This document shows positions 23,905-63,441 of a DNA stretch of 64,000 bases, piece by piece. Positions within the stretch are counted from its first letter, which is position 1. Every line of letters begins with the position of its first letter. The position numbers and the translations under genes were made by a program. The notes below the pieces were generated by a model, which had not been told where the DNA came from, did not search any database, and saw only the letters and a program-made list of their open reading frames with translations. Location: NCBI GenBank assembly GCA_002269645.1, contig NIVC01002882.1, positions 1 to 64,000 on the forward strand, read 5' to 3'. Origin of the DNA: Macrostomum lignano. Lineage: Eukaryota.

Positions 23905-29206
<5,302 letters not shown>

Positions 29207-43065: not shown

Positions 43066-43815
43066 TCATCGGACACAAGCGACAAATCCAGCAACAACCA
43101 GCGCCGCTCCAAGACCGAAAGTTGAGGACCCGAGCACGACGGCTCCAACGAAGGTCACCCCTCCAGCAGCCAGAGCAATGCCAACTCTATCGCAGCCCTG
43201 CGACACCGTCTGGTCCTCGCAGTCCCTTAGTGAAATAGTAAAATAAATAATTGTGATATTAAAAAAGAGTGATAAAAGGTTAAACGCATCCAACACGGCA
43301 ACAAATTGGCTTCGTACCTCCCATCCGTGTGCTTACAACACTGTCGTTTGCCGCAGAGGGGCTGTCTGGAGAGAGTGTTTAGAAACGAACAACGACAATA
43401 TCATAGAGCATCAGATACTGCTTTTTCAATCATTTATCTAGGAATTCTCTGAGAGGTATCATTTCTACCATACTACATCGGAAGTAATTAATTTTTACTA
43501 TTGTGCTAAGAAAGTGCCAAATCAAATGATCAACTCATGTATGCCCCCTCTGAGACAAGGACCGACCCACTGTAGTATAACATGACGTAAAAACTCCAAG
43601 TTCGTGCAATTTTTGAAGGCTAATGCACCGTGGAGACGGAAAATGTTTTTTCATCACAAAATCAAAGATTGCATTTGATTCTGGGGCAGCCAGCAATGAA
43701 ACAGCTACGAGTTAATTATGTGACTAATAGCCAATAAGTTTGAATTCGAAAAATTGAAATTCACTTACGCCATCTGGCAATCTTTACAATTTTCCACTTC
43801 ACAGCACTGACTCAT
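43066..43815 (-). CDS. Cys/His-motif microprotein copy A (84 aa, hydrophobic tail); exons 43815-43769, 43365-43318, 43225-43066
   Basis: MSQCCEVENCKDCQMAQPLCGKRQCCKHTDGRDCEDQTVSQGCDRVGIALAAGGVTFVGAVVLGSSTFGLGAALVVAGFVACVR; donors GTAAGT and GTACGA, both introns phase 2; same structure in four paralogues. Confidence 0.8.
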
Positions 43816-44426
43816 GATGATCGTTTAATCAGTTAAACAAACCGAGATAACTCAGGCTTGTACTTCGAATTCATTTCTATATCTCCGTCTCAATTAGAGC
43901 TACTGTTTTTCTAGGGTCAAAACACGGTTGTACCTGGTGAGTCACTAGCTACGAGCGTACGTTCGAATTGCCTAGAACAATACTTCACCATAAAAACTAA
44001 AAATAATTTGCTGCAGATTTTTTCGGTTTCAAAAGTTCTTTTAACTTAACAAAACATTCCTGTGACAGGCTTGCGGTATATTGATTGTTTGAGTCATATA
44101 TGACACTATAAGAGTCCCGTAAGACACGAAGTAGAGATACTTCTAAGCCAATCTTATTCTTCATCTAAAATTGATTCTACTCAATTCCAGGCTCAATACC
44201 TACACAGTATTCTGACTGATTTTGTCACTTATAAACGGTACTCTATGGTTGCATCAGTGTTAAATTTAAATCGGTGTTAAACATTAAGAGTGAGAGATCA
44301 AGGAAAGCCAATGAGAAGGAGGATAGGAGAGAGAGCCTGCGCTAGTGAGAGGGGCCATGGCCGCACCGCCACAATAACCGCGCTGTTTCAAAAACTAAAG
44401 ATAGTACGAGATGAGACAGTTGAACT

Positions 44427-45932
44427 AGAGACAGGGGCGCCCACCAAGAGACAGGGGCGTCCACCAAGAGACAGGGGCGCCCACCAAGAGACAGGGACGC
44501 CCACCAAGAGACAGGGGCGCCCACCAAGAGACAGGGGCGCCCACCAAGAGACAGGGGCGTCTACCAAGAGACAGGGGCGTCTACCAAGAGACAGGGGCGC
44601 CCACCAAGAGACAGGGGCGCCCACCAAGAGACAGGGGCGCCCACCAAGAGACAGGGGCGTCCACCAAGAGACAGGGGCACCCACCAAGAGACAGGGGCGC
44701 CCACCAAGAGACAGGGGCGCCCACCAAGAGACAGGGGCGCCCACCAAGAGACAGGGGGCGCCCACCAAGAGACAGGGGCGCCCACCAAGAGACAGGGACG
44801 CCCACCAAGAGACAGGGGCGCCCATCAAAAGACAGGGGCGCCCACCAAGAGACAGGGGCGCCCACCAAGAGACAGGGGCGCCCACCAAGAGACAGGGACG
44901 CCCACCAAAGGACAGGGGTGCCTATCAAAAGACAGGGGCGCCCACCAAGAGACAGGGGCGCCCACCAAGAGACAGGGGCGCCCACCAAGAGACAGGGGCG
45001 CCCACCAAGAAACAGGGGCGCCCACCAAGAGACAGGGGCACCCACCAAGAGACAGGGGCGCCCACCAAGAGACAGGGGCGCCCACCAAGAGACAGGGGCG
45101 CGCACCAAGAGACAGGGGCGCCCACCAAGAGACAGGGGCGTCCACCAAGAGACAGGGTCGCCCACCAAGAGACAGGGGCGTCCACCAAGAGACAGGGTCG
45201 CCCACCAAGAGACAGGGGCGCCCACCAAGAGACAGGGGCGCCCACCAAGAGACAGGGGCGCCCACCAAGAGATAGGGGCGCTCAGCAAGAGACAGGGGGC
45301 GCCCACCAAGAGACAGGGGCGCCTACCAAGAGACAGGGGCGCCCACCAAGAGACAGGGGCGCCCACCAAGAGACAGGGGCGCCCACCAAGAGACAGGGGC
45401 ACCCACCAAGAGACAGGGGCGCCCACCAAGAGACAGGGGCACCCACCAAGAGACAAAGGCGCCCACCAAGAGACAGGGGCGCCCACCAAGAGACAGGGGC
45501 GCCCACCAAGAGACAGGGGCGCCCACCAAGAGACAGGGGCGCCCACCAAGAGACAGGGGCGCCCACCAAGAGACAGGGGCGCTCAGCAAGAGACAGGGGC
45601 ACCCACCAAGAGACAGGGGCGCCCACCAAGAGACAGGGGCGCCCACCAAGAGACAGGGGCGCCCACCAAGAGACAGGGGCGCCCACCAAGAGATAGGGGC
45701 GCTCAGCAAGAGACAGGGGGCGCCCACCAAGAGACAGGGGCGCCTACCAAGAGACAGGGGCGCCCACCAAGAGACAGGGGCGCCCACCAAGAGACAGGGG
45801 CGCCTACCAAAAGACAGGGGCGTTCAGCAAGAGACAGGGGGCGCCCACCAAGAGACAGGGGCGCCCACCAAGAGACAGGGGCGCCCACCAAGAGACAGGG
45901 CGCCCACCAAGAGACAGGGGCATCAACCAAGA
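44427..45932 (+). repeat. 20-bp minisatellite (CCACCAAGAGACAGGGGCGC)
   Basis: About 75 tandem copies. Confidence 0.96.
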
Positions 45933-46479
45933 GACTAAAGACACTTAATTATTGAAAAAGAAGGCTCATTTAAGATAATGAATTAGTAAAAGTTTAAGTC
46001 GTTAAGCGAAAATTTGAAGTTGACCTGACGAATGCATTGACGTTAAGTCGACTGCTGAATTGTTTCTAAGACCAACTGACATGTGAGCCGCATCTGAGTA
46101 GACGGAGAAAGTGATATTTTTAGCAGACAATTTGCTCATCTACATCAAACAGCATATGCCGACACTGTTGCTATAGTGATCAAAGATTTCTGCCGATTCA
46201 AAAACCATGCATGCAGCACGGTTGATGAACTCAGAAATACTCACATGACTTAGTTTATATGTAGCTTTAACACAATCAGCAAGCCGCTTAGCTTCAAATA
46301 GAACCGGCAAGCAAAAGCAAAATCGGCAAGTTAAAAGACAGTAAAATCAGTTGAAATTCCTTGAGTCCCAGTTGGAAGCAATGAACCAGCAACTTTTCTC
46401 TACCTATTTTGGCTATATATTGTTCGACAAAAAGTATCGCAGGGCTGTACAGACTCCGATCCGACCTTCCTACTCAAGG

Positions 46480-47223
46480 ATGACGCAGATCTCCAGATTA
46501 CTCAATGCGCTGCTGATTCTGCAGACCCTTCAGTCGGTGACGGCTCCGTGCCCTGCTCCGTTTCAACTCGAATCCGGCAGGTGCGTGTTTGTTAAAATGG
46601 CCCACAATTACACCTGGTGCGAGGCCAATCAACGATGCCAGGAGATGGGAGGCGAGCTGTTGAACCAGTACGAATCGCTGAAGTTGCTGCACCAAATGCC
46701 CAGCGTGAGCTGCACTCACTGCAAGCTGTGGTTCGGACTGAGCGACCTGGCTGATGAGAGAGACACCAAAAGGGGAGGCTGGCAGCGAGTCAATGACAAT
46801 GGAAAACTGCCTTACGACGCCTCACTGTGGTACACTGGCATGCCTAGCAGCGTTGGCAACCAAGACTGCATCGCCAGCTCCTCGTACACAGTGAAATTCA
46901 TTGATAACGACTGCTCGAACTTGCGCGGATTCGTCTGCGAGTACGTGGACCCGGAGGCGTCACCAGCGGTGGATTTCTGCAAGGCCAAATGGAAGCAGAC
47001 TGAGTTTAGGCGGACCAGCTACAACCCGAGCGGCAAGTACTGCTTCAAGGATGTCCCGGTGGACACCCTGGCGCAGTGCATAATGGCCGCGACTGCTGAT
47101 CGAAGCGCGAGGCGCGTGTTGTACAACACCAAGACGAACAAGTGCCGTCTGCTGCTGTTCACGGATGCTCAGGTGGAGCAGTGGATCGAGACTGGAGCCA
47201 ACTGGGTCAAATACAGCCTTTGA
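46480..47223 (+). CDS. Secreted C-type lectin domain protein with C-terminal PAN/apple-like module, 247 aa, intronless
   Basis: Signal peptide MTQISRLLNALLILQTLQSVTA; CPAPF...GRCVFV, TWCEANQRCQEMGGEL, LWFGLSD, NQDC, C...RGFVCE; then C...TLAQC...VLYNTKTNKCRL. Confidence 0.88.
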   Translation: MTQISRLLNALLILQTLQSVTAPCPAPFQLESGRCVFVKMAHNYTWCEANQRCQEMGGELLNQYESLKLLHQMPSVSCTHCKLWFGLSDLADERDTKRGGWQRVNDNGKLPYDASLWYTGMPSSVGNQDCIASSSYTVKFIDNDCSNLRGFVCEYVDPEASPAVDFCKAKWKQTEFRRTSYNPSGKYCFKDVPVDTLAQCIMAATADRSARRVLYNTKTNKCRLLLFTDAQVEQWIETGANWVKYSL

Positions 47224-48677
47224 TGGATGATGAGATTAACTGTTTAATAACATTTCCGAAAAATAATGTTGGATTTTTCAAAGTACTCTTATTCTTGAAG
47301 AAAAACCTACTTTGCTATTGAAGTCTACGGTACAATGTGGTGGGACTTTAAAATAACAAATGAAAATATTTTGATGAAAACACATCTTTTCTAGAACTTT
47401 ACGTAAATAAATACATAAACCCTATTATAACGTTTGTAACGGGTACTACAGTACATTAATCTTAAAATGCACCAATGAGAGGTTCACAACAAAAATTTTG
47501 TAGCTTACAGGTAAGAATATGTTTTGCTTTGATTTGCTCTTTCTTATATCGCAATAAAGTTAGAATTTGTTTCAAAAATATTGTCTTCAACGACTTTAAT
47601 GTCCTTGTTACTCTACTAAAACATCGAGCAGTAGTGTAGTTAGCGATTTATAACCAAGTAGCTAATAATACAGCAGTAAAAAATGCTAATTCGCATCATT
47701 GTGTACAAATTACTCGTGGAGTATTTGCTCTCCAAAAACGAGCTGGGCGTAATACGCGCTTATGGAAATGCAATTGAGCACAAGCTGAAAGAAGAGCCAA
47801 ACTATTACACTCACATTGTACTCACAGGAAACAACACTTTCTTCATTGTGTCCAATATTTTTAGAGGCGGCGTCTGCTTTATTTTTAGATAAGGAAAAAC
47901 CAGGTTAAAATTCATCGTGTTTGTATTTCCCAGCGATAATGCCGTCTCTCTCATAGTCTTTCGTGAAGCTTGAAAACAAGCTTGCAAAGGAAACGAAGAA
48001 GTTCAACTCTAATTATTTAATTACCATAGATCAGGGGGTCAGAGAAGGGGGAGGAGTAGAAGGGATAGAGAAGAGGGAAGAGAGATATGAGACAGGTGAG
48101 AGAATAAAGAAGAAGAGAGAAGAGAGGAGACGAGAGGAGGAATCGAAACCGAAAAAGGGGAGAGGAGAGGAGAGGAGAGAAGAGGGCTGAGAAGAGACAA
48201 AAACCTTGAGCGAGTGCTATTAAGACTTAAAAAATTCTTTTGAGTGGTTTTGCCCGAATCGCAGACAAGTGCCTTTTTAAAGACCCATCGCCACTGTGTT
48301 GTAACTGACAAACGTACCATCAACTCATTTTAGTGACCCCAAGAGAGACACTCACTGCTGTTACAAACGCTGTTGTATTCTGCGGTTTGTATCTGTTGCT
48401 TGTGTCAACAACAACAATAACAACAACAACAGCAACAAAATACGCTGTCATGATTTCTAGAAAGCTGCGTCACTGGGCGCACTTCTGGGCCAGGTCGCCA
48501 ATCAGAAGCTGTTCTGGGGTGTCAGTGACTTAGGCTTTTCTGTTAACTCGAAACGAGAGTTTGGCTCCTTCAGAGATTCCCTTTTATAGAAAAAGGTCAG
48601 ACCCAGTATTGTACGATGAATAGACTCGTTCATGATCCGAAACAAAACGGTGACCTCTACCCTCTTGGATTTCACCT

Positions 48678-48769: not shown

Positions 48770-49000
48770 ACGAACTCCTGACGGCTGACGTCCCCAGCAG
48801 CATCGTAAAAAGCCGATTTTGCTGGTTACGCTGATGATGTTGCAGCTATTGTCAGTGGCCCCAACACAAGCACTCTCCGGAACCTGATGCAGCAGTTCGC
48901 CGATAAGGCGCAAACCTAGGCCACCCGGCATGGCCTAACTATCAGCACCCGATAAGACTGTGGCCATTATCTTCACCAGGAAGCGGAAGTGGAGCATGCG
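48770..49000 (+). mobile_element. Non-LTR retrotransposon RT fragment (YADD region)
   Basis: AGYADDVAAIVSGPNTSTLRNLMQQFADKAQT*ATRHGLTIS..KTVAIIFTRKR; stop and frameshift. Confidence 0.75.
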
Positions 49001-49115
49001 GGGGCCGTCGTCTGCGATGGAGCATGCGGGGGCCGTCGTCTGCGATGGAGCATGCGGGGGCCGTCGTCTGCGATGGAGCATGCGGGGGCCGTCGTCTGCG
49101 ATGGAGCATGCGGGG
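48990..49115 (+). repeat. 28-bp tandem repeat (GGAGCATGCGGGGGCCGTCGTCTGCGAT) x4.5
   Basis: Period 28 from 48991. Confidence 0.9.
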
Positions 49116-49269
49116 TTTGGTCTGAGGACGTCCGCCCGGATGTCTGCGTGTGTCGGGCATTATGAGGTGTTCGAGATCCTCCTCGGCTTTGCCGCATTCT
49201 GGGCAGGTCGCAGATAGCTCCAGTCCGATGCGGTGGCGATATTTGTGGAGGCGGGGCCGGTAGCAGCGA

Positions 49270-49635
49270 TCGGTAAAGCGCGTCCAAGGCTCGCTCTCGC
49301 GTTTCGGTCAGCGGCACAGCCTCCATGCCGTACAGCAGGATCGGCTCTACGGCCGCGCGGAACAGGCGCATCTTCAGGTCGTCTCTGGCAGCTGGATTGA
49401 AGGCGTTCCTGAGGAGGTGCGCGGCACGCCAGGCCTGGTTCCTCCTGTCGGAGACAATCGCATCGGGGCTCATCACCAGGGCGCCGAGGTACCGGAAGTC
49501 CTCGCACACGGCGATGCGGTCTCCATTGGGCAGCGTGAGAGTTAGGGCGGTATTCGTGCCCACGCACAGCGCCTCCGTCTTTCGAGCATTCAACAGCAGC
49601 CCAACACGGGCACCCTCGTCGCAGAGCCTTGTGAG
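49270..49635 (-). mobile_element. RTE-clade LINE fragment (C-terminal RT/thumb region)
   Basis: GLLLNARKTEAL...EDFRYLGA...DRRNQAWRAAH...LKMRLFRAAVEPILLYGMEAVPLT. Confidence 0.85.
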
Positions 49636-49944
49636 ATCGCGCTGCTATTCGTAGTACGTAAATAAGTAACTCAAAAGGATGTTCGATCATGCATAATGAC
49701 TGCCTGTCTCATTTGTATATTATAAATTGTGTGCCAAAATTTCTAAAAATTATTGCTACGATTTTGAACGACCCATGTTTAAATCTGAAAATGACGCTGG
49801 ACTCAAAAATTGAACAAGGTACAGCTCCTAGTTAAGGAATATACGCTCGTATACGTATCAAGACACAGCGAAAGATGCTAGCATATTGTTAAGAATCTGT
49901 CTTAAGAAGCTTGAAATTTTTTATCATCCATCGTATAAGATCGA

Positions 49945-50417
49945 ATGGCAAACCAGTGCTGTCAGAAGTCAAATCGCAAAGCATGTGCGAATGTGTAAGT
50001 GATTTGATTTTATTGCCGGTAGCTACAGTGCTACATACTGCTTTTCGATATCTCAATTAGAGGCAATGCATGATACTGATCTTATCAATCCACTTCTTTC
50101 CTATTGAAGGTACTCGTATTGTGACTTTTCTTAAATTTTTTCTGTCCTTTCTTTCCTTTCTGCCAGAAGGAAAACCAATCCTAATGTGTGCTGCCAGCAT
50201 CCGAATTGCGAGTAAGTCGATCATCTGTTTTAACAGCCGGAGTGCATTAATTACTAATAAATATCTAGGAGAGGTCAAGTGCGTTTCTACAAGTACATTT
50301 TTATTCGAAAGATCTCGTTTGATGCGGTAAAATATTGGTGTCCAAAATTTATCACAGCTTGCTGTGTTGGTACGTACAGTGTTTCAATTCTTTTTCAGAG
50401 GCTGCGGTAACCGTTAA
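49945..50417 (+). CDS. Cys/His-motif microprotein copy B (37 aa, no tail; possibly pseudogene); exons 49945-49994, 50167-50211, 50399-50417
   Basis: MANQCCQKSNRKACANVRKTNPNVCCQHPNCEGCGNR*; two phase-2 GTAAGT donors; third Cys is CGC (Arg); exon 3 acceptor chosen by the G-C motif and is uncertain. Confidence 0.55.
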
Positions 50418-51239
50418 TCCAATTGGCAACGCTCCTGGCTGCTGGCTGCTTTGTTTTAAATAAACACTTTGTTTACCAGTCGAGAGCAAACAGTTTTCAT
50501 TAAAGACTTTTGTTCAATTTCTGACAGCTGATCTACAGTAACCACCAATGCACGAGAGCCCCCATCCCTGCACCCAAAAGTAATGCCTGAGTAATATAAA
50601 AGCGGAAACTCTGTCTTATTCCCTATATTGAGCTTAAATTGAAGCTGAGATTTCAACCATTTTAAATATTTTTATTTGCTTCTGTGATTTAGTCTGCGCA
50701 AACTTTTTATTCAAATATTTCCGTGAGCCGATTTCTTAGAATTCATAAAATACATGGATGGATTACCTACTCCCCACCCAGAATCTCAGTAAAACTGATG
50801 GATTTACGATCTTATCCAATGCCTTTCGATGTCTTTCGTCTTTGCCAAGTGCTTGCTGGCTCAAGCCTTTGTCTAAAATTTGAGAAGACGTCAGTTATAA
50901 ATTAAGATCAGTATAAGTACCTGATGTGAGCGCAAGAGAGACGAAAGCTGCAATAGACCAAATTGAAATGTCGCCTAAGTATGGCAATGATTCCAAGTGC
51001 ATTATTGCGAGCTCGAATGACCAAAAAAGCAATTTAGTCAGCTCACTATTTTGTATTGCTGCAAAATGATGAATTTGGCATGTAGCTGGTAGATGCTACC
51101 AGCAAAAAGTCAAAAAGTAAGGTACTGCCTTGTAGGGGCTATGTACCTGTACGAACTATCGTATACGAGTACATTTACCGTTCGACAATGTACTCGTAGC
51201 TAAACTTTATTTTCAGTGTGAGTGTTTCAATTAAGTATC

Positions 51240-51745
51240 AGTAGTGTGACTCTCCCAAAGTCAGTATGACTCTCCCAGTGTCAGTATGACTCTCCCAGTG
51301 TCAGTATGACTCTCCCAGTGTCAGTATGACTCTCCCAGTGTCAGTGTGGCTTTCCCAGTGTCAATGTGACTCTCCCAGTGTCATTGTGACTCTTCCAGTG
51401 TCAGTGTGACTCAGTGTGACTCAGTGTGACTCTCCCAGTGTCTGTTTGACTCAGTGTGACTCTCCCAGTGTCAGTGTGACTCTCCCAGTGTCAGTATGAC
51501 TCTCCCAGTGTCAGTGTGGCTCTCCCAGTGTCAATGTGACTCTCCCAGTATCATTGTGACTCTTCCAGTGTCAGTGTGACTCAGTGTGACTCTCCCAGTG
51601 TCATTGTGACTCTCCCAGTGTCTGTGTGACTCTCCCAGTGTCTGTGTGACTCTCCCAGTGTCAGTGTGACTCAGTGTGACTCAGTGTGACTCTCCCAGTG
51701 TCTGTTTGACTCAGTGTGACTCTCCCAGTGTCAGTGTGACTCTAC
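51240..51745 (+). repeat. 20-bp minisatellite with 10-bp subunits (CAGTGTGACTCTCCCAGTGT)
   Basis: Direct inspection. Confidence 0.92.
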
Positions 51746-52227
51746 CTCTTCTCTGAAGTCCATTAACAACTGCAGAATAGAGCAACTGATGCAACTGAGT
51801 CTGTGTGTAAGTGCCCACCTCATACTCGAACTAGCACGAGTGTTAAACCTAGATGAATTCTATTTCCACGACCTTGTTACTAAGTTATAATTTGACAAAA
51901 CGTGTGCTCTAAATTAAGATTTGCACAGAATAAACTCAGCTTTGATGGAGAAGAAGCAAAGTGGCCGTCGGTTACGTGTCGATTATTTATGGCACAAGTA
52001 ACAGCTGGAGCCAACTCATTGCTGCAAGATAATGAGCATCGAATGAAATTATCTTAGACAAAAATGAGACTCGACAACAGAACGCTGAGGTACTACCGTA
52101 TGGGGTCCATCTAAGGCTATATTTATTGCTGTTACAGTAAATACAGTACCGCTACAGTGCAGTAAAATTCGAAATTTTGCCTTTGACGACTAAATTACGC
52201 GAGGTTCACGGATCATTTGCATCCACA

Positions 52228-53721
52228 ATGGGTCTGTGTTGTTCGGTGGAGGACTGCCCTCGTTGTAAAAGTGTGTAAGTTTTTCGAATTGCGAGACGCT
52301 CAAGGTCTATTTTCTATTCCGTGATAAAACTTGCGGAGATCATCAGTAGCTTAACTCCGCGCGCTACGATAGACAAAGGAATTCTACGAGTAGCCCGAGT
52401 TTATCTTCACTCCCCGTAATATCAGGCAGGCTCACAGGCAGAGCTGCATTATACGCTTGTAATAATACACTGAACCAGACAGATACTCCAGAGTCTGTCT
52501 GGGAGGCTGGCCCAGCAACTGAGGATCTTGGAGGCTGGCCCAGCAACTGAGGATCTGGGAGGCTGGCCCAGCAACTGAGGATCTGGGAGGCTGGCCCAGC
52601 AACTGAGGATCTGGGAGGCTGGCCCAGCAACTGAGGATCTGGGAGGCTGGCTTAGCAACAGAGGATCTGGGAGGCTGGCCCAGCAACTGAGGAACTGGGA
52701 GGCTGGCCCAGTAACTGACACTCTGGGAGGCTGGCCCAGCAACTGAGGATCTGGGAGGCTGGCCCAGCAACTGAGGATCTGGGAGGCTGGCCCAGCAACT
52801 GAGGAACTGGGAGGCTGGCCCAGTAACTGAGGATCTGGGAGGCTGGCCCAGCAACTGAGGATCTGGGAGGCTGGCCCAGCAATCAGAGTCTGGAGTATTT
52901 CATTGTTTTGTTGTATTATTATATATTTGAATCAATGTCAAAGCTCTGTGGCATGCGGTCATTTAAGCATTAATTACCAATAAAATATCCCACAAAGTAT
53001 TGCATTTTCCCTATTGTTAATTCGTTAATTAAGCCGTCTCTCCAGTAGCCCATCTGACTCCCACAGTAGCCCAACTGACTCCCTTCCACAGTAGCCAATC
53101 TGACTCTCAGTATTAGTCGGACTTGCCATTTAGCATTCCGACCGCATAACTATGATTCCTCAAATTCATTTCGCAATCGTAAAGTTGCTTCTATATGAAC
53201 AGAATAATGTTCAGGTGAACTGGTAAAGTTATCAATATGAAATATACATTTAAGCGGTGCGAGAAAAGTTTTAGAGAAATCAATATTTCATTTATAGATA
53301 TATGTACTGGTCCTAAAAAACCTCCCTTCCCTATAGTTGGTACTGGATCCTCTCGTGTTCCATTGACCCTGCCATACTCGTATGCCTCTGAAAACCGGTT
53401 ATTTAAAATTATGACAATTTTAGAAGAGACGAACGCGAACGCCGCGACGGCTAACGTGATGGATGCTGCAAACACCCAAACAAAAAGTACGCTGTTTTGT
53501 TTATCTGCGCAGAATCGCCAGCCCGAAACTCTTTCCCCTACATGCACAATGCTACTCATTTCAGTGGCTGCGAACCCGCTACATACAGTGTTGAACCTAA
53601 AATACTGGCGCCCAATGCCGGCGATGCTGCCATCGATGCTGGAGTTCCAATCAGGGAGCCAACTCTAGCGAGCAACGGTGAAGCGGATGACACAGTTTAC
53701 TTCAACAGCGATATAATCTAG
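52228..53721 (+). pseudogene. Cys/His-motif microprotein copy C (acidic tail) with in-frame stop; exons 52228-52274, 53424-53486, 53565-53721
   Basis: MGLCCSVEDCPRCKSVRDERERRDG*RDGCCKHPNKNGCEPATYSVEPKILAPNAGDAAIDAGVP...; TAA at 53452-53454 inside a duplicated RDG; phase-2 introns. Confidence 0.7.
52498..52883 (+). repeat. 28-bp minisatellite (CTGGGAGGCTGGCCCAGCAACTGAGGAT), locus 2
   Basis: About 14 copies; flanked by direct repeat CAGAGTCTG. Confidence 0.93.
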
Positions 53722-54606
53722 CAGTGTCATTTTTGATGTCGCAAGGCTAGCAACAGCTGACTAACAACAGCGGTGTTTTAGTTGTCCCTACATGATACCG
53801 TAGTAACACATCTAACTTTTAGTAAGCTGTTTTGTCATCAGATCCATGAGTCGGCAGGTGCATGTGCAAGCTTAATTTCTTTAGCACTTATTTAGAAAAA
53901 CAAACCGTCTGAGTTCTCGCAGTCTCAGGGTATCTAAGTAATCTCGGCTTCAGTAACTACTCGATAATTAACTGCATCCTGGTGATGCCATCTGGTTACA
54001 CATTTAGTTGTAGCGTAGCATTGGTAATGCTGCATCTAAAAGCTTTGATCTTCTCTTGGCAGTTCTCCTCCTCCGTGTACCCCGCCAGCGCTTCCTCACA
54101 GACTCGCTAACACTTCCCCGATTCTTTGGGAAAAAAGATTTGAAATTAAACTTAATACTCTCACTCACTACCTCATCAGAAGCACCGCACACACATCGGA
54201 TTAATAATTTCACCCAGAATATAGCAACTCTGCCAGAACATTGACAAACACAATCTGCTGATGACTGATCTACTGAGCAGGATAGGTAAGTCTCGATAGT
54301 CACATACGCTCGTATTTTGTCTGAAGCGTAGAAAAATATAGAGAGGTGCTGCAATTTTCGGCAGATTACCTTCAAACAGCATGAGCCGACACTGCTAGTT
54401 AAGTGATCAGTGATCAATTCTGTCAATTGCAAAACCTGCAGAGTTGATGAACTAAGCTGCTTGAGTCTTTTACAAACTATACTCAGATGGCTCACTTCAG
54501 CTTCAACTCGAGCAGAAAAGCGCCAGCTTCAAATGGAACCGGCAAACAAAAGCAAAATCGTCACAGGGCTGTACAGACTCCAATCTAACATTCCTGCTCA
54601 AGACTG

Positions 54607-55020
54607 ATGCAGATCTCCAGACTACTCAAGGCACTGCTGATTCTGCAGACCCTTCAGTCAGTGACGGCTTCATGCCCTGCTTCGTTTCAACTCGAATCCA
54701 GCAGGTGCGTGTTTGTTAAAATGGCCCACAATTACACCTGGTGCGAGGCCAATCAACGATGCCAGGAGATGGGAGGCGAGCTGTTGAACCAGTACGAATC
54801 GTTGAAGGTGCTGGATCATATGCCCAGCGTGAGCTGCACTCACTGCAGGCTGTGGTTCGGACTGAGCGACCTGGCCGATGAGACAGACACCAAAAGGGGG
54901 GGGGGGGCTGGCAGCGGATCAATGACAATGGAAAGCTGCCTTACTACGCCTCACTGTGGTACGTTAATGCAAGTGAAATTCATCGATAAACCGAACTTGC
55001 GCGGATTCGTCTGCGAGTCG
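54607..55020 (+). pseudogene. Truncated, frameshifted duplicate of the C-type lectin at 46480
   Basis: Near-identical N-terminal half; frameshift at the G12 run 54896-54907; internal deletion; C-terminal module missing; upstream ~54260-54600 also matches ~46060-46470. Confidence 0.8.
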
Positions 55021-55069
55021 AACGGAATCGTCATCAACAATGCCAGTTGTCAGTTAGTTCTTTAAGGCA

Positions 55070-55569: not shown

Positions 55570-56900
55570 CAATGATTTTAACATGACGCTTCTATGATTG
55601 TTTACATGACGCTTTTATGATTTTAACATGACGCTTCTATGATTGTTTACATGACGCTTCTATGATTGTTTACATGACGCTTCTATGATTGTTTACATGA
55701 CGCTTCTATGATTGTTTACATGACGCTTTTATGATTTTAACATGACGCTTCTATGATTGTTTACATGACGCTTTTATGATTTTAACATGACGCTTCTATG
55801 ATTGTTTACATGACGCTTCTATGATTGTTTACATGACGCTTCTATGATTGTTTACATGACGCTTCTATGATTGTTTACATGACGCTTTTATGATTTTAAC
55901 ATGACGCTTCTATGATTGTTTACATGACGCTTTTATGATTTTAACATGACGCTTCTATGATTGTTTACATGACGCTTCTATGATTGTTTACATGACGCTT
56001 CTATGATTGTTTACATGACGCTTCTATGATTGTTTACATGACGCTTCTATGATTGTTTACACTACGCTTCTATGATTGTTTACATGACGCTTTTATGATT
56101 TTAACATGACGCTTCTATGATTTTTTACATGACGCTTTTATGATTTTAACAAGACGCTTCTATGATTGTTTACATGACGCTTTTATGATTTTAACAGGAC
56201 GCTTCTATGATTGTTTACATGACGCTTTTATGATTGTTTACATGACGCTTCTATGATTGTTTACATGACGCTTCTATGATTGTTTACATGACGCTTTTAT
56301 GATTTTAACATGACGCTTCTATGATTGTTTACATCACACTTTTATGATTTTAACATGACGCTTCTATGATTGTTTACATGACGCTTCTATGATTTTTTAC
56401 ATGACGCTTCTATGATTGTTTACATGACGCTTTTATGATTTTAACATGACGCTTCTATGACTGTTTACATGACGCTTCTATGATTGTTTACATGACGCTT
56501 CTATGATTGTTTACATGACGCTTCTATGATTGTTTACATGACGCTTCTATGGTTGTTTACATGACGCTTCTATGATTGTTTACATGACGCTTCTATGATT
56601 GTTTACATGACGCTTCTATGATTGTTTACATGACGCTTCTATGATTGTTTACATGACGCTTTTATGATTTTAACATGACGCTTCTATGATTTTTTACATG
56701 ACGCTTTTATGATTTTAACAAGACGCTTCTATGATTGTTTACATGACGCTTTTATGATTTTAACATGACGCTTCTATGATTGTTTACATGACGCTTCTAT
56801 GATTGTTTACATGACGCTTCTATGATTGTTTACATGACGCTTCTATGATTGTTTACATGACGCTTCTATGATTGTTTGCAGGACGCTTTTATGATTTAAG
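55570..56900 (+). repeat. 22/23-bp satellite (CATGACGCTTCTATGATTGTTTA / CATGACGCTTTTATGATTTTAA)
   Basis: About 58 copies of two variant units. Confidence 0.96.
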
Positions 56901-58139: not shown

Positions 58140-58440
58140 TCTCATATGTCGTTCAGTGTTGCCAGGACAGTTTTCGTGTCACTGTTCATTGGTGTGACAG
58201 GTGCTCTAGAACGTTTTACGCACGGAGCTCCTTCGGGAGCACTGCCCTGACGACGGAGTCGAATTCCTGGGTGAAATTTATAAAAATAACAATCGTAGGA
58301 TCGACTGGTCCGCGGCTCCTCGATGACTGGATAAAGAGCCAGGATCTGTGCCATTGTGCCGCGATGGTGCCGGAACCCGTTTTGTTGAGGGCACTTGTGC
58401 GGATCCAGCAGGGGCTGCAACCGCGATGGTTGCGAAACAG
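58140..58440 (-). mobile_element. Degenerate LINE RT fragment (domains 2-3)
   Basis: QPLLDPH..PQQNGFRHHRGTMAQILAL...IEE; frameshifted FTQEFDSV (KAFDSV-like). Confidence 0.7.
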
Positions 58441-59220
58441 TGCAGAAACGAAGACAGATGACTCGTGTCTCTATATAAGTAAAGTAACACTGTTCGTTTC
58501 TTGACTTGTGCTCATAGATTGCAGCTACTTTATACAGATACTACTGCTTGAATTTCTAAAGTAGTGTATAAATATATAGCTCGTACGCTCGAAAAGCGAT
58601 AAAAAGCGATAAAGATTGAAATTAGCAGCTACAGTGGCTAAGAGCAGTGGGTTAGAAAACTACCAACCCAAGGAGTTGTGGACGATAGGTGGTACAATAA
58701 AAGGACGACGCAAATGCGCAATACGAGCTAGTACTTGCCGCGTTCTATTTAGCCCTCGCGTTTAGGCTATATTTAGATCTGGGGAAGTACCTGATTTGGA
58801 TTCTCCAGCAGTAACTCGTACTAAACTGCTCTTTACGCAATTGAGAAGGATATAAATCTTCTACGTGATTTTGTAGACCTTAAAAGATGTGTGCTGTAAA
58901 TGCCTCAACAATATGACTGCTGATTGTACGCTCGTATGTCACATTTAGTTAAGAAAGTTATCTTTCCAGCAATTAATTTTTGTCATATTAACCATGCGTA
59001 TGATGTCATGGAGCTTGATCAAGAGCAAAAATTATCAATAACCTTTTACGTGCTAATTCTTCTCTACTTAACGGTTCCGAGGATAGATAAAAATGGGATG
59101 CTTTTCCCTTGATTTCCCCCAATTTTCGGTAACGATACATTACTTACAAGAGGTCACTAAAAACCAGGCGGCATTGATAAAAGTGGTAGCAAGACTGAGA
59201 GTCAGGAGGAGGACAAAGAC

Positions 59221-59425
59221 AGGTGTTGTAAAGATCCAGCCAAATGTGAGCTGTGCATGTAAGACTTTGTTTGTCTGTTTTACTATCTGATTTAACATTA
59301 CGAGCGTATTTTGATTTTGACCTTGTATTCAGCGTGATCATGGTGACTTTGCTTAAGTAATTCTCTAGAATTCTAATATCACCGTGTCGACGAGTTTTCA
59401 CCTTGAGAGGCTGGTTTCTTAGAAA
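59221..59425 (+). pseudogene. Probable relic of the Cys/His microprotein family
   Basis: RCCKDPAKCELC followed by a phase-2 AT|GTAAGA donor at 59258/59259; possible decayed exon 2 ending GGCCGCAG|GTAAGA; no in-frame ATG found. Confidence 0.35.
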
Positions 59426-60805
59426 CGGCCGCAGGTAAGATTTAGATGAAAAGCCGTAAATTAGCCGTGTGGTCACTCTTTCAAACGCCATTCGCTGGAT
59501 TTACAAGCTAGGACCATGATTTCCAATTTTCATACCTGTCTTTATTATTCTTGGCTCATTATTCAATATCAAAGTTTTGTTTAAACTATGCTAAATGGAT
59601 CCCAATTGATTTGATCGGTGATTTCATCACAAGAAATTTTTTAAACATGTTTATTCAGTTATTCAGCGACTTTCCCTGGCTACTCAACGGGCAAGGTTTT
59701 AAATACAAGCATGCAAGGGGTTTGGACTAAATTACATTATTAATAAACTAAGCTTAAACTCAACTTATAGATAAAAGTCAGTCCGAGTCCGAGATTTGTC
59801 GTTTGCCGTTCGATTATTCACCAAATTTACAAAAACTGGAGTTATTTTGATGCCATATGATTATTATTCAGGATTGCAAATTTCAAGACTTTGGCGCACA
59901 CTTCTAATCCAGTGTAAATTCCCGGATAGCGTGCACTGCAGCGCTTGCAGTCTATAAAAGTACATTCGCAGTTCTGGACGCGTAAATGCAATACGAATTA
60001 TTCTAGCTCTGTAAAGAATTTTTACGCCTTCACGGTGGGGTTGTTGCAAAGTCTAGTAAGCTCATGTGCTGCTGTCCAGAGGGACTAATAGGAACTGCCA
60101 CTTGGCGGGTTGCCAGGAACTCAAAAAGGTCAAAAACTTGTTCGCTGGTATCCTCATGCTGTTGAAAATCAAAGACGTCCCACAGACTTCTACAGAACAA
60201 CACCTATTGCTGTTCTCAATTGCAACATCTTTAGTGAACTACTTATTCAAAATTATCAATCTGAATGTATTACTCAATTCAATCCAACTCAATTTAAGAT
60301 GGCTTTCGCTGAATTCCTAAATTCGACTTAGCTTGTACAAGATTCTACTTCAGTTCTCTCGCCCTCTCTTGGATTTTGGTCTCTTTTTCTTGTGTGTTGT
60401 ACCTTGTTTTTTTCACTGAGTTTTCTATTCTCAAATCATTCTTTTCTTCCAACTATATACTTAGCTACCATGCAAGTCCTAAATTAGATTTTATGCAGGT
60501 AATGTATATTTTCAACAAACTTTGGGCAAAAAATCTGTATTTGAGTCACTGGCGTCATGCATGCAATTATCTCGTTGATGGAAAGCAGTTTTGATGCACG
60601 AAGTACATCTACTCCGCTGAAGAGTATCCAAATTCGAACTCAAGCATGGCCCTTCGCTTACTGAGCTCGTCTATAAGATTGATGAGGTACTACCTGTCAT
60701 GAATATGCATTAAGGGAGCTATCAACTATTTACGAGTAGATCTAAGGCCTTTTTCAACACTGCATTGTCCTGTATTCTATTGAAATTCATGCAGAGTCAA
60801 CCACC

Positions 60806-61952
60806 ATGAATCAGTGTTGTCATAAACCTTTTTGTTGGAACTGCTTTCAAATGTAAGTGAAGTAAATTGATAATGCTGCCATTATTTTGATACTTCTGGT
60901 TGATCTAACTACGAGCCTCTACGTAGCCTCTCAGCCTTCGACTAACGTGCCTGAGAGCTCAGAAATCAATTTTTGAGAGCTCTGGACTCCCACAACTACC
61001 AGATAGTCAGTGATAGTCAGTATCCTCACAGGTAGTTTATGTAGCATTTTCTGCTCATGTTAATCCTATGAGCTTTTAACTGATCATAGTTAGAAAATTC
61101 AAGCTTGAAAATCGACAAAAACTTTAGTCTATGGGCTCATAGACTCATGCCCATCAAGCCAGCCATCAATCAGATCATCTAAGTATGACTGAATTTTAAC
61201 TTCGATCCTGATGTTGATGCTGATGATAAGATCGAGCTGATGCGTTAGGGGAAGAGCTGATGGAGAGCTGGATGAAAGATTCCCTGTCCAGTAGCCTTGT
61301 GAGTGTCTATCTGGTTATATATGGTCATCTATGGTCATCTATGGTCATCTATGGTCATCTATGGTCATCTATGGTCATCTATGGTCATCTATGGTCATCT
61401 ATGGTCATCTATGGTCATCTATGGTCATCTATTGTCATCTAAGAGTAAGAGTCATTTAAGAGTAGAGTCAGAAGCTTGTAAGTTAGCTCATAAATCATGA
61501 TGGCCCGTCAAAAATGATGCGATTAAAAAGCACTTGCACTTGAGTTTCGAGACGGAGTAGGGCAAAATATATGAAAAAACGATTGATAATTAAAAAAAGA
61601 TCCCAATAAAAAGAGTCGCTTAATTTTCTTAATCCATTAATTTGAAATTTTCCGCTGTTTTAGGAGTCCGTCAGGCGGATGCTGCGCTCATCCAAGCGGC
61701 AGGTGTGTCTTTATGTACTATTAAACACGCTTGACTACGTAAGCAGTTGCAATTTTTACGCAATTTTCCTCTCTACATTTTGTTTCTTTTAGAGGTTGTC
61801 GCGCTAAGAGTGTAGCAACAAGCATTGTTGCTGCTGGTGGCGGTGGAGCTGCCGCTTGTGCTGCCGCTGGTGCAGTGGCTGTTGCTGCCACGCCAGTGAT
61901 AGTCGGTGGAGCTGTGGTGGCTGGAATTGCCTGCCTAATTAAGTTTATTTAA
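60806..61952 (+). CDS. Cys/His-motif microprotein copy D (81 aa, hydrophobic tail); exons 60806-60852, 61664-61702, 61793-61952
   Basis: MNQCCHKPFCWNCFQMSPSGGCCAHPSGRGCRAKSVATSIVAAGGGGAAACAAAGAVAVAATPVIVGGAVVAGIACLIKFI; CCACCATG start; phase-2 introns; exon 1 (47 nt) and exon 3 (160 nt) have the same lengths as in copy A. Confidence 0.8.
61318..61440 (+). repeat. (ATGGTCATCT)n 10-bp repeat in intron 1 of copy D
   Basis: About 12 copies. Confidence 0.92.
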
Positions 61953-62123
61953 CTAGGCCAATGTAAAGCCGACTGATTTAAACAGTACTAAAAAGTTCAT
62001 TATCGTAAACTGTGCCTAAACTCTACACGGTACTCTAAAATCTACATTTTTAATATCAACAGTGAGCAAAAGCAGTTTGAAATATTTTTGTATCATAATA
62101 ATAACAATACAAGTAATAGGGTT

Positions 62124-62280
62124 GCAGCCTAGTGGTTGGACTCGGGACTTGAAGGTCGAAAGTTCGATTCCCGAACCCACCTGGAACAATTTGTGTCCTT
62201 GAGCAAGGTACTCAACTATACATTGCTTCAGTTCACCCAGCATTAGCTTGGGTAATTGAGGGTGTGTGTGGCGACCCCCA
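62124..62280 (+). mobile_element. tRNA-derived CORE-like SINE, third copy
   Basis: CAGCCTAGTGGTT (box A), AGTTCGATTCC (box B), TGTGTCCTTGAGCAAGGTACTC...CATTGCTTCAGTTCACCCAGC. Confidence 0.8.
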
Positions 62281-62833
62281 CCAGTCAATGACTGAATCAT
62301 GGATTGAACAGACGTACGCAATTAGCTGCGCAATGTAATCAATTATTATAGTAACTACGAATATAAACATTTTGTATTAATCATTAATATGTACCATTTT
62401 TTATTCAGAATACCTTCAGCAGAATTTTGGAAGCAACGGAATTTGTTATTGACTTTGCTATCCATTGTTTTGTAATTTCTTACACACGCTGAGTATTATC
62501 TACAATTTACAAGCTGACACCGCAAAATGCTTTTTTTGTCGAAAAATCTACAAGACTGCCGCCACACTGTAATGGGTTGGATGCTTCAGATGGTTCAGAC
62601 AAAGACTGACAGTGTTACTTTTTCAATATCAAAAAGTCTTCTAACATGCATTTTGTGTAAGACCGATGGATGCGGTACAACCTGCATGTACTGCCGTGTT
62701 TTCACCAATATTGACTTCATTTAAAGAATCCTGGACCCAGCTTTGCGATGCTATTCGACCAAAGTGTTGGTGATTTGATTTCTCTACAGCGGGCAAAGGC
62801 TTCTGACAAATCACAAATAAATTCTTCAAGACC

Positions 62834-63441
62834 ATGGGCCCAGTTTCTGCACAATGCTGTCAGAAGAAAGATTGTGTCGACTGCAAGCGTATGTAAGTAA
62901 TTTTATTCAGAACTGTTAATTGGGTTTTTAGGTGCGCGGCAAGGAAGCCTCTATGTTTGTTGCTCTCCTCAAAGAGGAATTTAAGAAGACACTCAAAAGA
63001 TTCCCGTACGCTCGTAGACTTTTGAGACTAAACTTGTACACATTTAAGGCTTCGCTCCGACAAGTTGTCTTTGGTCAAGGACCTGGATCCTTTCGTGTTC
63101 CATTGACCCTGTCATGCCTCTGTAAAGCAGTTCTTTAACGTTTTGACAATTTTAGAAGAGACAACTGCAATCCGCGAGACGGATGCTGCGTACACCCGAT
63201 GGGCACGTAAGTCGCATTGTTTATCTGCGCAGAATCGCCAGCACGAAGCTCTTTCCCCTACATGCACACTGCTACTCATTTCAGAGGCTGCGAACCCGCT
63301 ACAGACGATGTTGAATGTACAATGCTGTCGGCCATTGCTGGCGATGCTACCATAGATCCTGGAGTTCCAATCGAAGAGCCAAATCTAGCGAGCAGCCGTG
63401 GAGCGGATAATGCAGCTGACATCAGCATCGATTTTATCTAG
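62834..63441 (+). CDS. Cys/His-motif microprotein copy E (88 aa, acidic tail); exons 62834-62892, 63156-63206, 63285-63441
   Basis: MGPVSAQCCQKKDCVDCKRIRDNCNPRDGCCVHPMGTGCEPATDDVECTMLSAIAGDATIDPGVPIEEPNLASSRGADNAADISIDFI; two GTAAGT phase-2 donors; intact frame. Confidence 0.8.

What the first reader, a model, noticed from the sequence alone, without database searches (positions are those of the whole stretch)
43066..63441. Hidden family of 3-exon Cys/His microproteins (CC-x4-C-x2-C ... CC-x-H-x5-C), five copies plus a relic
Seen in sequence: five loci (43815-, 49945+, 52228+, 60806+, 62834+) share one gene plan. It is a 47-59 nt first exon (M-x-x-CC-x4-C-x2-C) and a 39-63 nt second exon (CC-x-H). 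Both introns are phase 2 with canonical GT-AG, and the third exon opens with x-C. In four copies exon 3 is 157-160 nt. CC-x-H-x5-C is invariant in all five while the spacers differ freely, which argues for selection on the Cys/His ligands. None of the genes appears as a whole in the ORF track because the exons are too short. Inference: there is no signal peptide, so the module is probably a cytosolic Zn/metal-binding knuckle (C-x4-C...C-x2-H spacing recalls CCCH-type fingers) or a palmitoylation-rich head. I do not recognise it as a named family (not metallothionein, CYSTM or macin as I know them). Its position beside a duplicated C-type lectin and its birth-and-death pattern suggest an immune/defence or stress locus.
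Basis: partly seen in the sequence, partly recalled or inferred. Interest (0 to 1): 0.88.

Follow-up and report, generated by a model that had tools for sequence, protein, structure and literature searches.

The report
Flatworm Cys/His-headed membrane microprotein gene cluster
A cluster of tiny three-exon genes in the flatworm Macrostomum lignano encodes 66-88 residue proteins that share a seven-cysteine, one-histidine head joined to different tails (membrane anchors or an acidic tail); the family is real, found only in this species, mostly unannotated and of unknown function.

Summary
The window is Macrostomum lignano contig NIVC01002882.1:1-64000. All five loci have the stated plan: exon 1 of 47-59 nt, exon 2 of 39-63 nt, two phase-2 GT-AG introns, and exon 3 opening x-C. 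Composition-preserving shuffles give no such model.

The spliced g5 model (62834-63441) is identical over 88 of 88 residues to GenBank PAA54599.1, from an RNA-seq-based annotation. An intact g3 counterpart on a duplicated contig is also annotated.

- g3 carries an in-frame TAA in exon 2.
- g2 has lost one Cys and is truncated, whereas its counterpart on the duplicated contig is an intact 66-aa tail-anchored protein.
- The exon-3 tails of g1 and g4 are Gly/Ala-rich transmembrane hairpins.

The family is therefore one Cys7-His head joined, through same-phase introns, to three tail types. A shared motif, GGTACWRCY, lies 119-160 nt upstream of all five start codons.

Pfam, PDB sequences, a head profile against 1.84 billion proteins and a word-indexed search found nothing outside M. 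lignano.

My best reading is a membrane-tethered head that faces the cytosol and binds metal (two Zn-type sites), possibly also acylated. The metal binding is inferred, not shown. The immune-locus idea has no support. Interest is moderate.

The parts
43769..43815 (-). g1 exon 1 (MSQCCEVENCKDCQMA, 47 nt, phase-2 donor GTAAGT)
43318..43365 (-). g1 exon 2 (QPLCGKRQCCKHTDGR, 48 nt, a symmetric 2-2 exon)
43066..43225 (-). g1 exon 3 (DC...; Gly/Ala-rich hydrophobic hairpin, residues about 45-84; stop TGA). The full product is 84 aa. It is in no protein database searched.
49945..50417 (+). g2, a defective copy. Exons are 49945-49994, 50167-50211 and 50399-50417. One Cys of the head is lost (CCQKSNRKAC). 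A TAA at 50415-50417 sits where the counterpart on the duplicated contig has GGA and then continues into a transmembrane helix.
52228..53721 (+). g3, acidic-tail type, with a nonsense codon. Exons are 52228-52274, 53424-53486 and 53565-53721. The in-frame TAA is at 53452-53454. The counterpart on contig NIVC01000551.1 has Tyr there and is annotated as PAA81081.1 (88 aa). Intron 1 holds a 28-nt minisatellite (52498-52882).
60806..60852 (+). g4 exon 1 (MNQCCHKPFCWNCFQM, 47 nt)
61664..61702 (+). g4 exon 2 (SPSGGCCAHPSGR, 39 nt)
61793..61952 (+). g4 exon 3 (GC...; Ala/Gly-rich hydrophobic hairpin with a central Pro). The product is 81 aa and is not annotated at NCBI. It is intact in two other duplicated loci: one has an identical protein, the other a protein differing at 18 residues and by in-frame indels only.
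62834..63441 (+). g5. Exons are 62834-62892, 63156-63206 and 63285-63441. The product is 88 aa with an acidic, non-membrane tail, and is identical to PAA54599.1 (BOX15_Mlig034504g1).
43926..43934 (-). Upstream motif GGTACAACC, 119 nt before the g1 ATG
49818..49826 (+). Upstream motif GGTACAGCT, 127 nt before the g2 ATG
52089..52097 (+). Upstream motif GGTACTACC, 139 nt before the g3 ATG
60686..60694 (+). Upstream motif GGTACTACC, 120 nt before the g4 ATG
62674..62682 (+). Upstream motif GGTACAACC, 160 nt before the g5 ATG
46351..47223 (+). Context: intact single-exon C-type lectin (Pfam PF00059, E = 1.6e-7). It heads the first copy of the duplicated block lectin / membrane-tail gene / acidic-tail gene.
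54499..55065 (+). Context: second lectin copy, 91% identical to the first over about 400 nt, but out of frame in the middle. It heads the second copy of the block.

Best explanation
This is a gene family, seen so far only in Macrostomum lignano, that encodes 66-88 residue proteins built from two modules.

Module 1 is the head. It is encoded by exons 1 and 2 plus the first codons of exon 3, and reads M-x(2-6)-CC-x4-C-x2-C-x(8-15)-CC-x-H-x5-C. That gives seven Cys and one His at fixed spacing.

Module 2 is all of exon 3, and it differs between members:
- a Gly/Ala-rich two-helix membrane hairpin (g1, g4);
- a single C-terminal transmembrane helix (the intact counterpart of g2);
- a soluble acidic tail (g3, g5).

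All introns are phase 2, so heads and tails could be recombined by exon shuffling without breaking the frame.

The proteins have no signal peptide. The hydrophobic segment sits at the extreme C-terminus of a protein under 90 residues, so it should be inserted after translation (tail-anchor or hairpin mode), leaving the head in the cytosol.

In the reducing cytosol, eight ligands at fixed spacing are best explained as two tetrahedral metal sites: a Cys4 site from exon 1 and a Cys3His site from exons 2 and 3. I therefore read the proteins as membrane-tethered metal-binding modules, most likely binding Zn. The N-terminal CC may also be S-acylated.

The cluster arose by tandem duplication of a lectin / membrane-tail gene / acidic-tail gene block. 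It is turning over: two of the five window copies are dead.

Shown: the gene structures, the RNA-based annotation of g5 and of the g3 counterpart, the conservation pattern, the hydrophobic tails, and the restriction to M. lignano in the databases searched.

Inferred: the topology, the metal binding and the biological role.
For: - Gene plan at all five loci, far above chance.
- g5 is identical to PAA54599.1. The intact g3 counterpart is PAA81081.1, with exactly the predicted exon span. That annotation was built from mapped RNA-seq with StringTie, TACO and TransDecoder (PMC5730564).
- g4 keeps an open three-exon frame in a duplicated locus despite about 12% exon divergence and three in-frame indels.
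- The only invariant head columns are Met1, the Cys and the His. Synonymous divergence between g1, g2 and g4 is saturated.
- dN/dS is 0.3-0.8, and exons diverge about as fast as introns, so constraint falls mainly on the ligands and the frame.
- Hydropathy: spans with 17-residue Kyte-Doolittle means of 1.6 or more cover residues 45-84 (g1), 45-81 (g4) and 41-65 (g2 counterpart). There are none in g3 or g5.
- The motif GGTACWRCY has 7 hits in 64 kb. Five lie 119-160 nt upstream of the five ATGs, in the gene orientation.
- The duplicated block is colinear.
Against: - No metal-binding or localisation data exist.
- AlphaFold2 on a 5-row alignment gave mean pLDDT 42, which is uninformative.
- Two adjacent Cys rarely bind the same Zn in classical fingers.
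- No Pfam zinc-finger or metallothionein model matches, even at E up to 10.
- No metal-response element (TGCRCNC) lies within 600 nt upstream of any copy.
- g1, g4 and the g2 counterpart are absent from the RNA-based NCBI annotation, so their expression is unproven.
- dN/dS near 0.5-0.8 from few sites does not exclude relaxed constraint.
Confidence: 0.5

Rival explanations
1. The head is mainly a lipidation platform. The CC pairs are S-palmitoylated, and Gly2 of g3 is N-myristoylated. This would drive tight membrane or microdomain association rather than metal binding.
For: - N-terminal MxxCC resembles known acylated N-termini such as GAP-43 and the Src-family MGC motifs (from my own knowledge, not tested here).
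- g3 and its counterpart start MGLCCS, which fits the PROSITE-type myristoylation pattern G-{EDRKHPFYW}-x2-[STAGCN]-{P} by inspection of the sequences.
- The two members that lack a transmembrane tail are the only ones with Gly2.
Against: - Acylation needs neither an invariant His nor fixed CC-x-H-x5-C and C-x2-C spacing across saturated divergence.
- g5 has Pro after Gly2, which the myristoylation pattern excludes.
- The membrane-tail members already have an anchor.
Confidence: 0.22
2. The head carries a redox-active or Fe-S centre. An example would be a 3Cys-1His cluster on a membrane-anchored protein, as in mitoNEET-type proteins. It would act in redox sensing or cluster transfer at an organelle surface.
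For: - The second half-site is 3 Cys + 1 His and the first is 4 Cys.
- The transmembrane tails are moderately hydrophobic and Gly/Ala-rich, with a basic residue near the C-terminus. This is reminiscent of outer-mitochondrial-membrane tail anchors (my own knowledge).
Against: - No match to the CDGSH model or any other Fe-S Pfam model.
- The spacing is unlike CDGSH.
- This reading is speculative.
Confidence: 0.08
3. The genes encode secreted, disulfide-rich defence or toxin-like peptides of an immune locus next to C-type lectins.
For: - They lie next to a C-type lectin.
- Spacer residues evolve fast while Cys are conserved. In the related g6 gene, exon 1 diverges faster than the flanking non-coding DNA: 15/47 against 25/245 differences, p = 3e-4.
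- The cluster shows gene birth and death.
Against: - There is no signal peptide; the N-terminus is polar and Cys-rich.
- The hydrophobic segments are C-terminal, which does not support secretion of the head.
- An invariant His is unusual for disulfide knots.
- No infection-related expression data were found.
Confidence: 0.07
4. The loci are decaying or non-functional ORFs, for example remnants carried by a repeat or annotation noise, and have no protein-level function.
For: - Two of the five window copies are broken.
- Exons diverge about as fast as introns.
- The membrane-tail members are not annotated.
- TE fragments lie nearby.
Against: - Frame, splice sites and all eight ligand positions are kept in paralogs with saturated synonymous divergence, and in three duplicated loci. 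Indels fall only in multiples of three.
- Two members are in an RNA-seq-based annotation.
- No DNA-level repeat relationship exists between g1, g2 and g4, and no TE ORF is attached.
- There is a shared upstream motif.
Confidence: 0.08

Closest known systems
CYSTM (cysteine-rich transmembrane module) proteins, Pfam PF12734
   Same: They are small eukaryotic Cys-rich tail-anchored membrane proteins with a cytosolic N-terminus, and are linked to metal and stress tolerance (PMC10217909, abstract seen).
   Different: - In CYSTM the Cys lie in and next to the C-terminal transmembrane helix. Here they form an N-terminal soluble head, 10-20 residues before the hydrophobic tail.
- No Pfam match at E up to 10.
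- Two members here have no transmembrane segment at all.
LITAF/SIMPLE-like domain (zinc-binding monotopic membrane proteins)
   Same: It combines Cys-rich zinc ligands with a hydrophobic in-plane or hairpin membrane anchor in a small domain (PMC5095921, abstract seen).
   Different: - LITAF places CxxC and HxCxxC knuckles on both sides of the hydrophobic segment. Here all ligands precede it.
- No Pfam match.
- The ligand spacing is different.
Metallothioneins
   Same: They are short, Cys-dense, lack a signal peptide, contain CC and CxxC motifs, evolve fast at non-Cys positions, and occur in tandemly duplicated clusters.
   Different: - Cys density is lower here: 7-10 Cys in a 35-45 residue head and about 10% of the whole protein.
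- The pattern here is a fixed eight-ligand one with an invariant His.
- These proteins carry membrane or acidic tails.
- No Pfam metallothionein match, and no MRE upstream.
Schistosome micro-exon genes (MEGs)
   Same: They are flatworm lineage-specific families of small proteins built from very short exons, including symmetric exons that can be skipped in frame.
   Different: - MEGs encode secreted proteins with signal peptides and have many micro-exons of 36 nt or less (my own knowledge).
- Here there are three exons, only exon 2 is symmetric (39-63 nt), and there is no signal peptide.

Membership tests
CYSTM (PF12734) | Match to the CYSTM profile | tested here: not met
   hmmscan against Pfam-A at E up to 10 gave no family for g1, g2, g4, g5, or the g2, g3 and g4 counterparts.
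CYSTM (PF12734) | Cys cluster located within or next to the C-terminal transmembrane helix | tested here: not met
   The conserved Cys lie in residues 4-34 (up to 39 in g5). The hydrophobic spans start at residue 39-45.
LITAF-like zinc ribbon (PF10601) | CxxC ... hydrophobic segment ... HxCxxC arrangement, and a profile match | tested here: not met
   No Pfam hit. All ligands are N-terminal to the hydrophobic segment.
CCCH zinc finger (PF00642 and relatives) | C-x(7-8)-C-x(4-5)-C-x3-H spacing and a profile match | tested here: not met
   The observed spacing is CC-x4-C-x2-C ... CC-x-H-x5-C. No Pfam hit.
Metallothionein families (Pfam) | Profile match and Cys content of about 30% | tested here: not met
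   No Pfam hit. There are 7-10 Cys in 66-88 residues.
Metallothionein families (Pfam) | Metal-responsive promoter (MRE, TGCRCNC) | tested here: not met
   No MRE-like site lies within 600 nt upstream of any of the five genes. The window average is 0.69 per kb. Whether flatworms use MTF-1 and MREs at all is unknown.
Schistosome micro-exon genes | Signal peptide plus a series of symmetric micro-exons of 36 nt or less | tested here: not met
   There are three exons of 47-59, 39-63 and 157-160 nt. The N-terminus is polar and Cys-rich, with no hydrophobic leader.
Tail-anchored / hairpin membrane proteins (a topological class, not a homology family) | No signal peptide; a single hydrophobic segment or hairpin at the extreme C-terminus, with only a few residues after it | tested here: met
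   For g1, g4, the g4 counterpart and the g2 counterpart, the spans with 17-residue Kyte-Doolittle means of 1.6 or more end 0-1 residues from the C-terminus. g3 and g5 do not qualify.
Tail-anchored / hairpin membrane proteins (a topological class, not a homology family) | Post-translational insertion with the N-terminus in the cytosol | not testable with these tools
   This needs a localisation or protease-protection experiment.

The most novel reading that the evidence does not exclude
A previously unrecognised class of membrane-tethered two-metal Cys7-His microproteins. One metal-binding head has been combined, through phase-2 exon shuffling, with a hairpin anchor, a tail anchor or a soluble acidic tail, under a shared promoter element. 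It would act as a flatworm-specific metal or redox buffer or sensor at membrane surfaces, in effect a membrane-anchored metallothionein-like system.
Probability: 0.25. Interest if true: 0.6.

Novelty: new variant of a known kind. Interest (0 to 1): 0.45.

Why it matters
M. lignano is a transgenic model for regeneration and stem-cell work, and a large share of its genes are orphans. This case shows three things:
- Multi-exon microprotein genes with membrane anchors can escape even an RNA-seq-based annotation. Three intact membrane-tail genes (g1, g4 and the g2 counterpart) are in no protein database I searched.
- A conserved ligand pattern together with intron phase can tie together proteins whose tails are unrelated.
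- The family gives a compact system for studying how small Cys-rich modules are shuffled onto different membrane anchors. It has a defined head, three tail types and a shared upstream motif.

If the head binds metal, it would be a new kind of membrane-tethered metal site. That would also bear on the use of this species in marine toxicology.

Tried and rejected
- Pfam on seven family proteins at E up to 10: no match.
- Word-indexed search of 5.8 billion proteins:
  - g1: no match, not even itself.
  - g5: only four M. lignano proteins.
  - 9-row head alignment: only P0003.
- Head profile against 1.84 billion representative proteins: only the M. lignano g3- and g5-type proteins. Two further hits are spurious: an F-type-lectin-like repeat protein carrying SGCCAHTNG, and a repeat-translation artefact.
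- PDB sequence search with the head profile at E up to 10: no match.
- AlphaFold2 of g1 with a 5-row alignment: mean pLDDT 42, so I did not pass it to fold search.
- Exact look-up of g1, g4, the g2 and g4 counterparts, g6 and several window ORFs: absent.
- Literature:
  - The four Mlig gene IDs appear in no full text.
  - They appear in no held supplement of PMC5816591, PMC5730564, PMC12896417 or PMC5946080.
- Metal-response elements upstream: none.
- Search for a sixth relic in the window by regex, tblastn and blastn: none found. The weak CC-containing hits near 46218, 58154 and 60208 are not gene-like.
- Transposon origin: rejected. There is no DNA similarity among g1, g2 and g4, no attached TE ORF, and positions are conserved on the duplicated contigs.
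- tRNA scan of the window: none.


Full report
**What the window is.** The sequence is eukaryotic, with GT-AG introns, many minisatellites, and V-ATPase and lectin exons. An exact-sequence look-up of my spliced g5 model returned GenBank PAA54599.1, [quoted passage not shown]. The encoding contig is NIVC01002882.1 of assembly GCA_002269645.1, and the gene lies at record positions 62834-63441. Window coordinates therefore equal record coordinates 1-64000.

**Checking the observation.** I read all five loci and rebuilt the models by script.

| Gene | Strand | Exon 1 | Exon 2 | Exon 3 | Exon lengths (nt) |
|---|---|---|---|---|---|
| g1 | - | 43769-43815 | 43318-43365 | 43066-43225 | 47 / 48 / 160 |
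| g2 | + | 49945-49994 | 50167-50211 | 50399-50417 | 50 / 45 / 19 |
| g3 | + | 52228-52274 | 53424-53486 | 53565-53721 | 47 / 63 / 157 |
| g4 | + | 60806-60852 | 61664-61702 | 61793-61952 | 47 / 39 / 160 |
| g5 | + | 62834-62892 | 63156-63206 | 63285-63441 | 59 / 51 / 157 |

- Every intron is GT-AG and phase 2.
- Every exon 2 has a length divisible by three, so it is a symmetric 2-2 exon.
- Every exon 3 opens with a split codon followed by x-C.
- A six-frame scan finds CC-x-H next to a donor, and M..CC heads, only at these loci in the whole 64 kb.
- A regex gene-finder gives 5 exon-1 matches and 4 open models in the real window. In 200 composition-preserving block shuffles the means were 0.095 and 0.

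The description is accurate and far above chance.

**External confirmation of splicing.**
- The g5 protein built from the predicted junctions is identical over all 88 residues to PAA54599.1.
- A near-identical copy, PAA75085.1 (89 aa), lies on contig NIVC01000905.1.
- On contig NIVC01000551.1 the g3 counterpart is annotated as an 88-residue gene, PAA81081.1. Its span equals my three-exon prediction exactly: L003 414-2010.
- The Mlig_3_7 annotation was derived from STAR-mapped RNA-seq assembled with StringTie and TACO, cut by trans-splicing and poly(A) evidence, and then passed through TransDecoder (PMC5730564). These junctions therefore rest on RNA evidence.
- g1, g4 and the g2 counterpart are in no protein collection I could query. 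They are also not among the called genes at the loci I could list: L001-L004, which cover g4, its counterparts and the g2 counterpart. The gene calls around g1 itself could not be listed.

1. Window g3 has an in-frame TAA at 53452-53454 in exon 2. The counterpart on the duplicated contig has a Tyr codon there. No AG lies between this stop and the CC codons, so alternative splicing cannot rescue it.
2. Window g2 has lost one Cys: it reads CCQKSNRKAC, where the counterpart reads CCRRPNCPNC. It stops six codons into exon 3, where the counterpart has GGA. That counterpart (L004 7350-7399 / 7587-7631 / 8011-8116) encodes an intact 66-residue protein ending in a single transmembrane helix...GSNSTIGMVGIFFLATGAVILIGAFGSKR.
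3. The tails.
   - g1 ends in VGIALAAGGVTFVGAVVLGSSTFGLGAALVVAGFVACVR.
   - g4 ends in SIVAAGGGGAAACAAAGAVAVAATPVIVGGAVVAGIACLIKFI.
   - Both are hydrophobic spans of about 38 residues, broken by SS or by TP. I read each as a two-helix hairpin.
   - Spans with 17-residue Kyte-Doolittle means of 1.6 or more cover residues 45-84 (g1), 45-81 (g4) and 41-65 (g2 counterpart). g3 and g5 have none, and carry net charges of -7 and -8.

**Family architecture.** The head alignment has only Met1, Cys and His as invariant columns. The pattern is CC-x4-C-x2-C, then 8-15 variable residues, then CC-x-H-x5-C, usually with H-P and G-C. The head is joined to three unrelated tail types, always across a phase-2 intron. 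This is the signature expected if tails were exchanged by exon shuffling. The block lectin / membrane-tail gene / acidic-tail gene occurs twice, colinearly. The two lectin copies are 91% identical, and the 3' halves of g3 and g5 are 77% identical. g1 lies inverted, upstream of the first block.

Two UniProt gene models from another assembly, A0A1I8J7M6 and A0A1I8G0Q4, join g4 exon 3 in frame to g5 exons. This shows that the phases are compatible, and it hints that g4 exon 3 is transcribed. I could not establish what evidence those models rest on.

**Selection.**
- Between paralogs g1, g2 and g4, synonymous divergence is saturated, yet the eight ligand positions, the frame and the splice sites are all kept.
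- Window g4 and its counterpart on NIVC01000551.1 differ at about 12% of exon positions and by three indels, all multiples of three.
- dN/dS is 0.28-0.80, from few sites.
- Exons diverge about as fast as non-coding flanks. The exception is g5 exon 3, which differs at 1 of 157 sites against 10% in flanking DNA.
- Constraint therefore falls on the ligands, the frame and, in g5, the acidic tail. Spacer residues are nearly free.

**Shared upstream element.** GGTACWRCY occurs 7 times in the window, against 2.5 expected. Five of those hits lie 119-160 nt upstream of the five start codons, in the gene orientation. The motif was defined after seeing the data. Even so, placing 5 of 7 hits into five 50-nt windows by chance is of order 1e-12 (my estimate). 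The rest of the flanking DNA of g1, g2 and g4 shows no detectable similarity. I read this as a retained cis-regulatory element, implying co-regulation.

**Relatives elsewhere.** Pfam gave nothing at E up to 10, and PDB sequences gave nothing. A head profile against 1.84 billion representative proteins returned only the M. lignano g3- and g5-type proteins plus two spurious hits. The word-indexed searches added nothing. Within the reach of these tools the family is restricted to M. lignano. Multi-exon microproteins are poorly represented in predicted proteomes, so absence elsewhere is weak evidence.

**How it most likely works.**
- Topology: there is no signal peptide, and the only hydrophobic segment lies at the extreme C-terminus of a protein under 90 residues. 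From established knowledge of tail-anchored proteins, such a segment is still inside the ribosome at termination and is inserted post-translationally, leaving the N-terminus in the cytosol.
- Metal binding: in the cytosol, seven Cys and one His at fixed spacing are best explained as two four-ligand metal sites. One is a Cys4 site encoded by exon 1. The other is a Cys3His site encoded by exon 2 plus the first Cys of exon 3.
- I therefore propose membrane-tethered metal-binding modules, most likely binding Zn. The Gly/Ala-rich hairpins may also oligomerise through small-xxx-small packing.
- S-acylation of the N-terminal CC, and myristoylation of the MGLCCS start of g3, may add to this or may be the main function; that is the chief rival reading.
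- Everything beyond sequence anatomy here is inference. AlphaFold2 gave pLDDT 42 and does not help.
- The immune-locus suggestion has no support beyond adjacency to a lectin (Pfam PF00059).

**Comparison with known families.** Functionally, the nearest analogues are CYSTM tail-anchored Cys-rich proteins and the zinc-binding monotopic LITAF domain (PMC10217909 and PMC5095921), and more loosely the metallothioneins. Membership in each was tested and not met, on profile matches and on ligand placement and spacing.

**Verdict.** This is a real, compact, lineage-restricted family. It is partly annotated as "hypothetical protein". Its membrane-anchored members and its modular logic had not been recognised. 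It is a new variant of the general kind "small Cys-rich membrane-associated proteins". Interest is moderate.

Noticed in passing
L001 17488-17651 (record NIVC01002882.1, about 70321-70484, 6.9 kb past the window end); also L002 17468 and L003 16434: A sixth relative (g6) has the same 47-nt phase-2 first exon (MASNCCPLGIFCPFCW) but only one further exon (IAWSQGRCCCRH, then stop), giving a 28-residue product. Between duplicated loci, exon 1 differs at 15/47 sites against 25/245 in flanking non-coding DNA (Fisher p = 3e-4), while the Cys are kept. Exon 2 shows a single, synonymous change. A degenerate copy lies near record 67.3-67.5 kb.
   Followed up: partly
L004 2634 and L004 4664 (NIVC01000551.1): The duplicated locus carries extra partial copies: an isolated exon-2-like piece (KESHPDRCCQHPNCG) and an exon-1-like piece (MDQCCSVQGCPRCKSV, with its minisatellite intron) that lacks exons 2 and 3. 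This is further evidence of gene birth and death.
   Followed up: partly
window 14305, 18811, 43950, 49842, 54305, 58927, 59299, 63007: The near-palindromic 10-mer TACGCTCGTA occurs 8 times exactly (12 with up to one mismatch, against 1.9 expected). The copies are scattered over the whole window, so it is not specific to this family. It may be a genome-wide regulatory or repeat-derived motif.
   Followed up: partly
window 54607-55065: The second C-type lectin copy reads out of frame in its middle relative to the intact copy at 46351-47223 (GGAGSGSMTMESCL... in place of GGWQRVNDNGKLPY...). The copy on the duplicated contig has the same shifted reading. It is either a shared pseudogene or a diverged variant.
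   Followed up: no
window 23905-27784, minus strand: These are exons of a V-type ATPase catalytic subunit A-like gene, judged from the ORF translations. The intervening sequence is filled by kilobase-scale short tandem repeats, which read through as (SIYL)n or (SVCL)n ORFs.
   Followed up: no
window 52498-52882 and 22881-23450: The 28-nt minisatellite inside g3 intron 1 (unit TCTGGGAGGCTGGCCCAGCAACTGAGGA) appears again about 30 kb away, judged from near-identical ORF translations. Other large arrays lie at 44427-45935 (20-mer, 75 copies) and 55572-56896 (23-mer, 58 copies).
   Followed up: no
window about 62120-62300; L004 about 7760-7840: A SINE-like element with a tRNA-like T-arm (…GTTCGATTCCCGAACC…) lies just downstream of g4. 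A related piece sits in intron 2 of the g2 counterpart. ARAGORN calls no tRNA gene anywhere in the window.
   Followed up: partly
window 48973-49690, minus strand; L002 1-2403: A reverse-transcriptase-like ORF fragment lies between the first lectin and g2. On one duplicated contig, a full retrotransposon polyprotein (RVT_1, RNase H, integrase) lies 8 kb upstream of g4.
   Followed up: no
UniProt A0A1I8J7M6 and A0A1I8G0Q4 (P0004, P0005): These gene models from another M. lignano assembly fuse g4 exon 3 to g5 exons in frame. One uses an acceptor immediately upstream of the g5 ATG. This could reflect co-transcription of g4 and g5 with a trans-splice acceptor, or an ab initio prediction artefact.
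   Followed up: no
window 51121-51129: A sixth GGTACWRCY hit (GGTACTGCC) lies between g2 and g3, just upstream of a 20-nt minisatellite (51243-51743). No head exon follows it. It may be the trace of a lost copy, or chance.
   Followed up: partly
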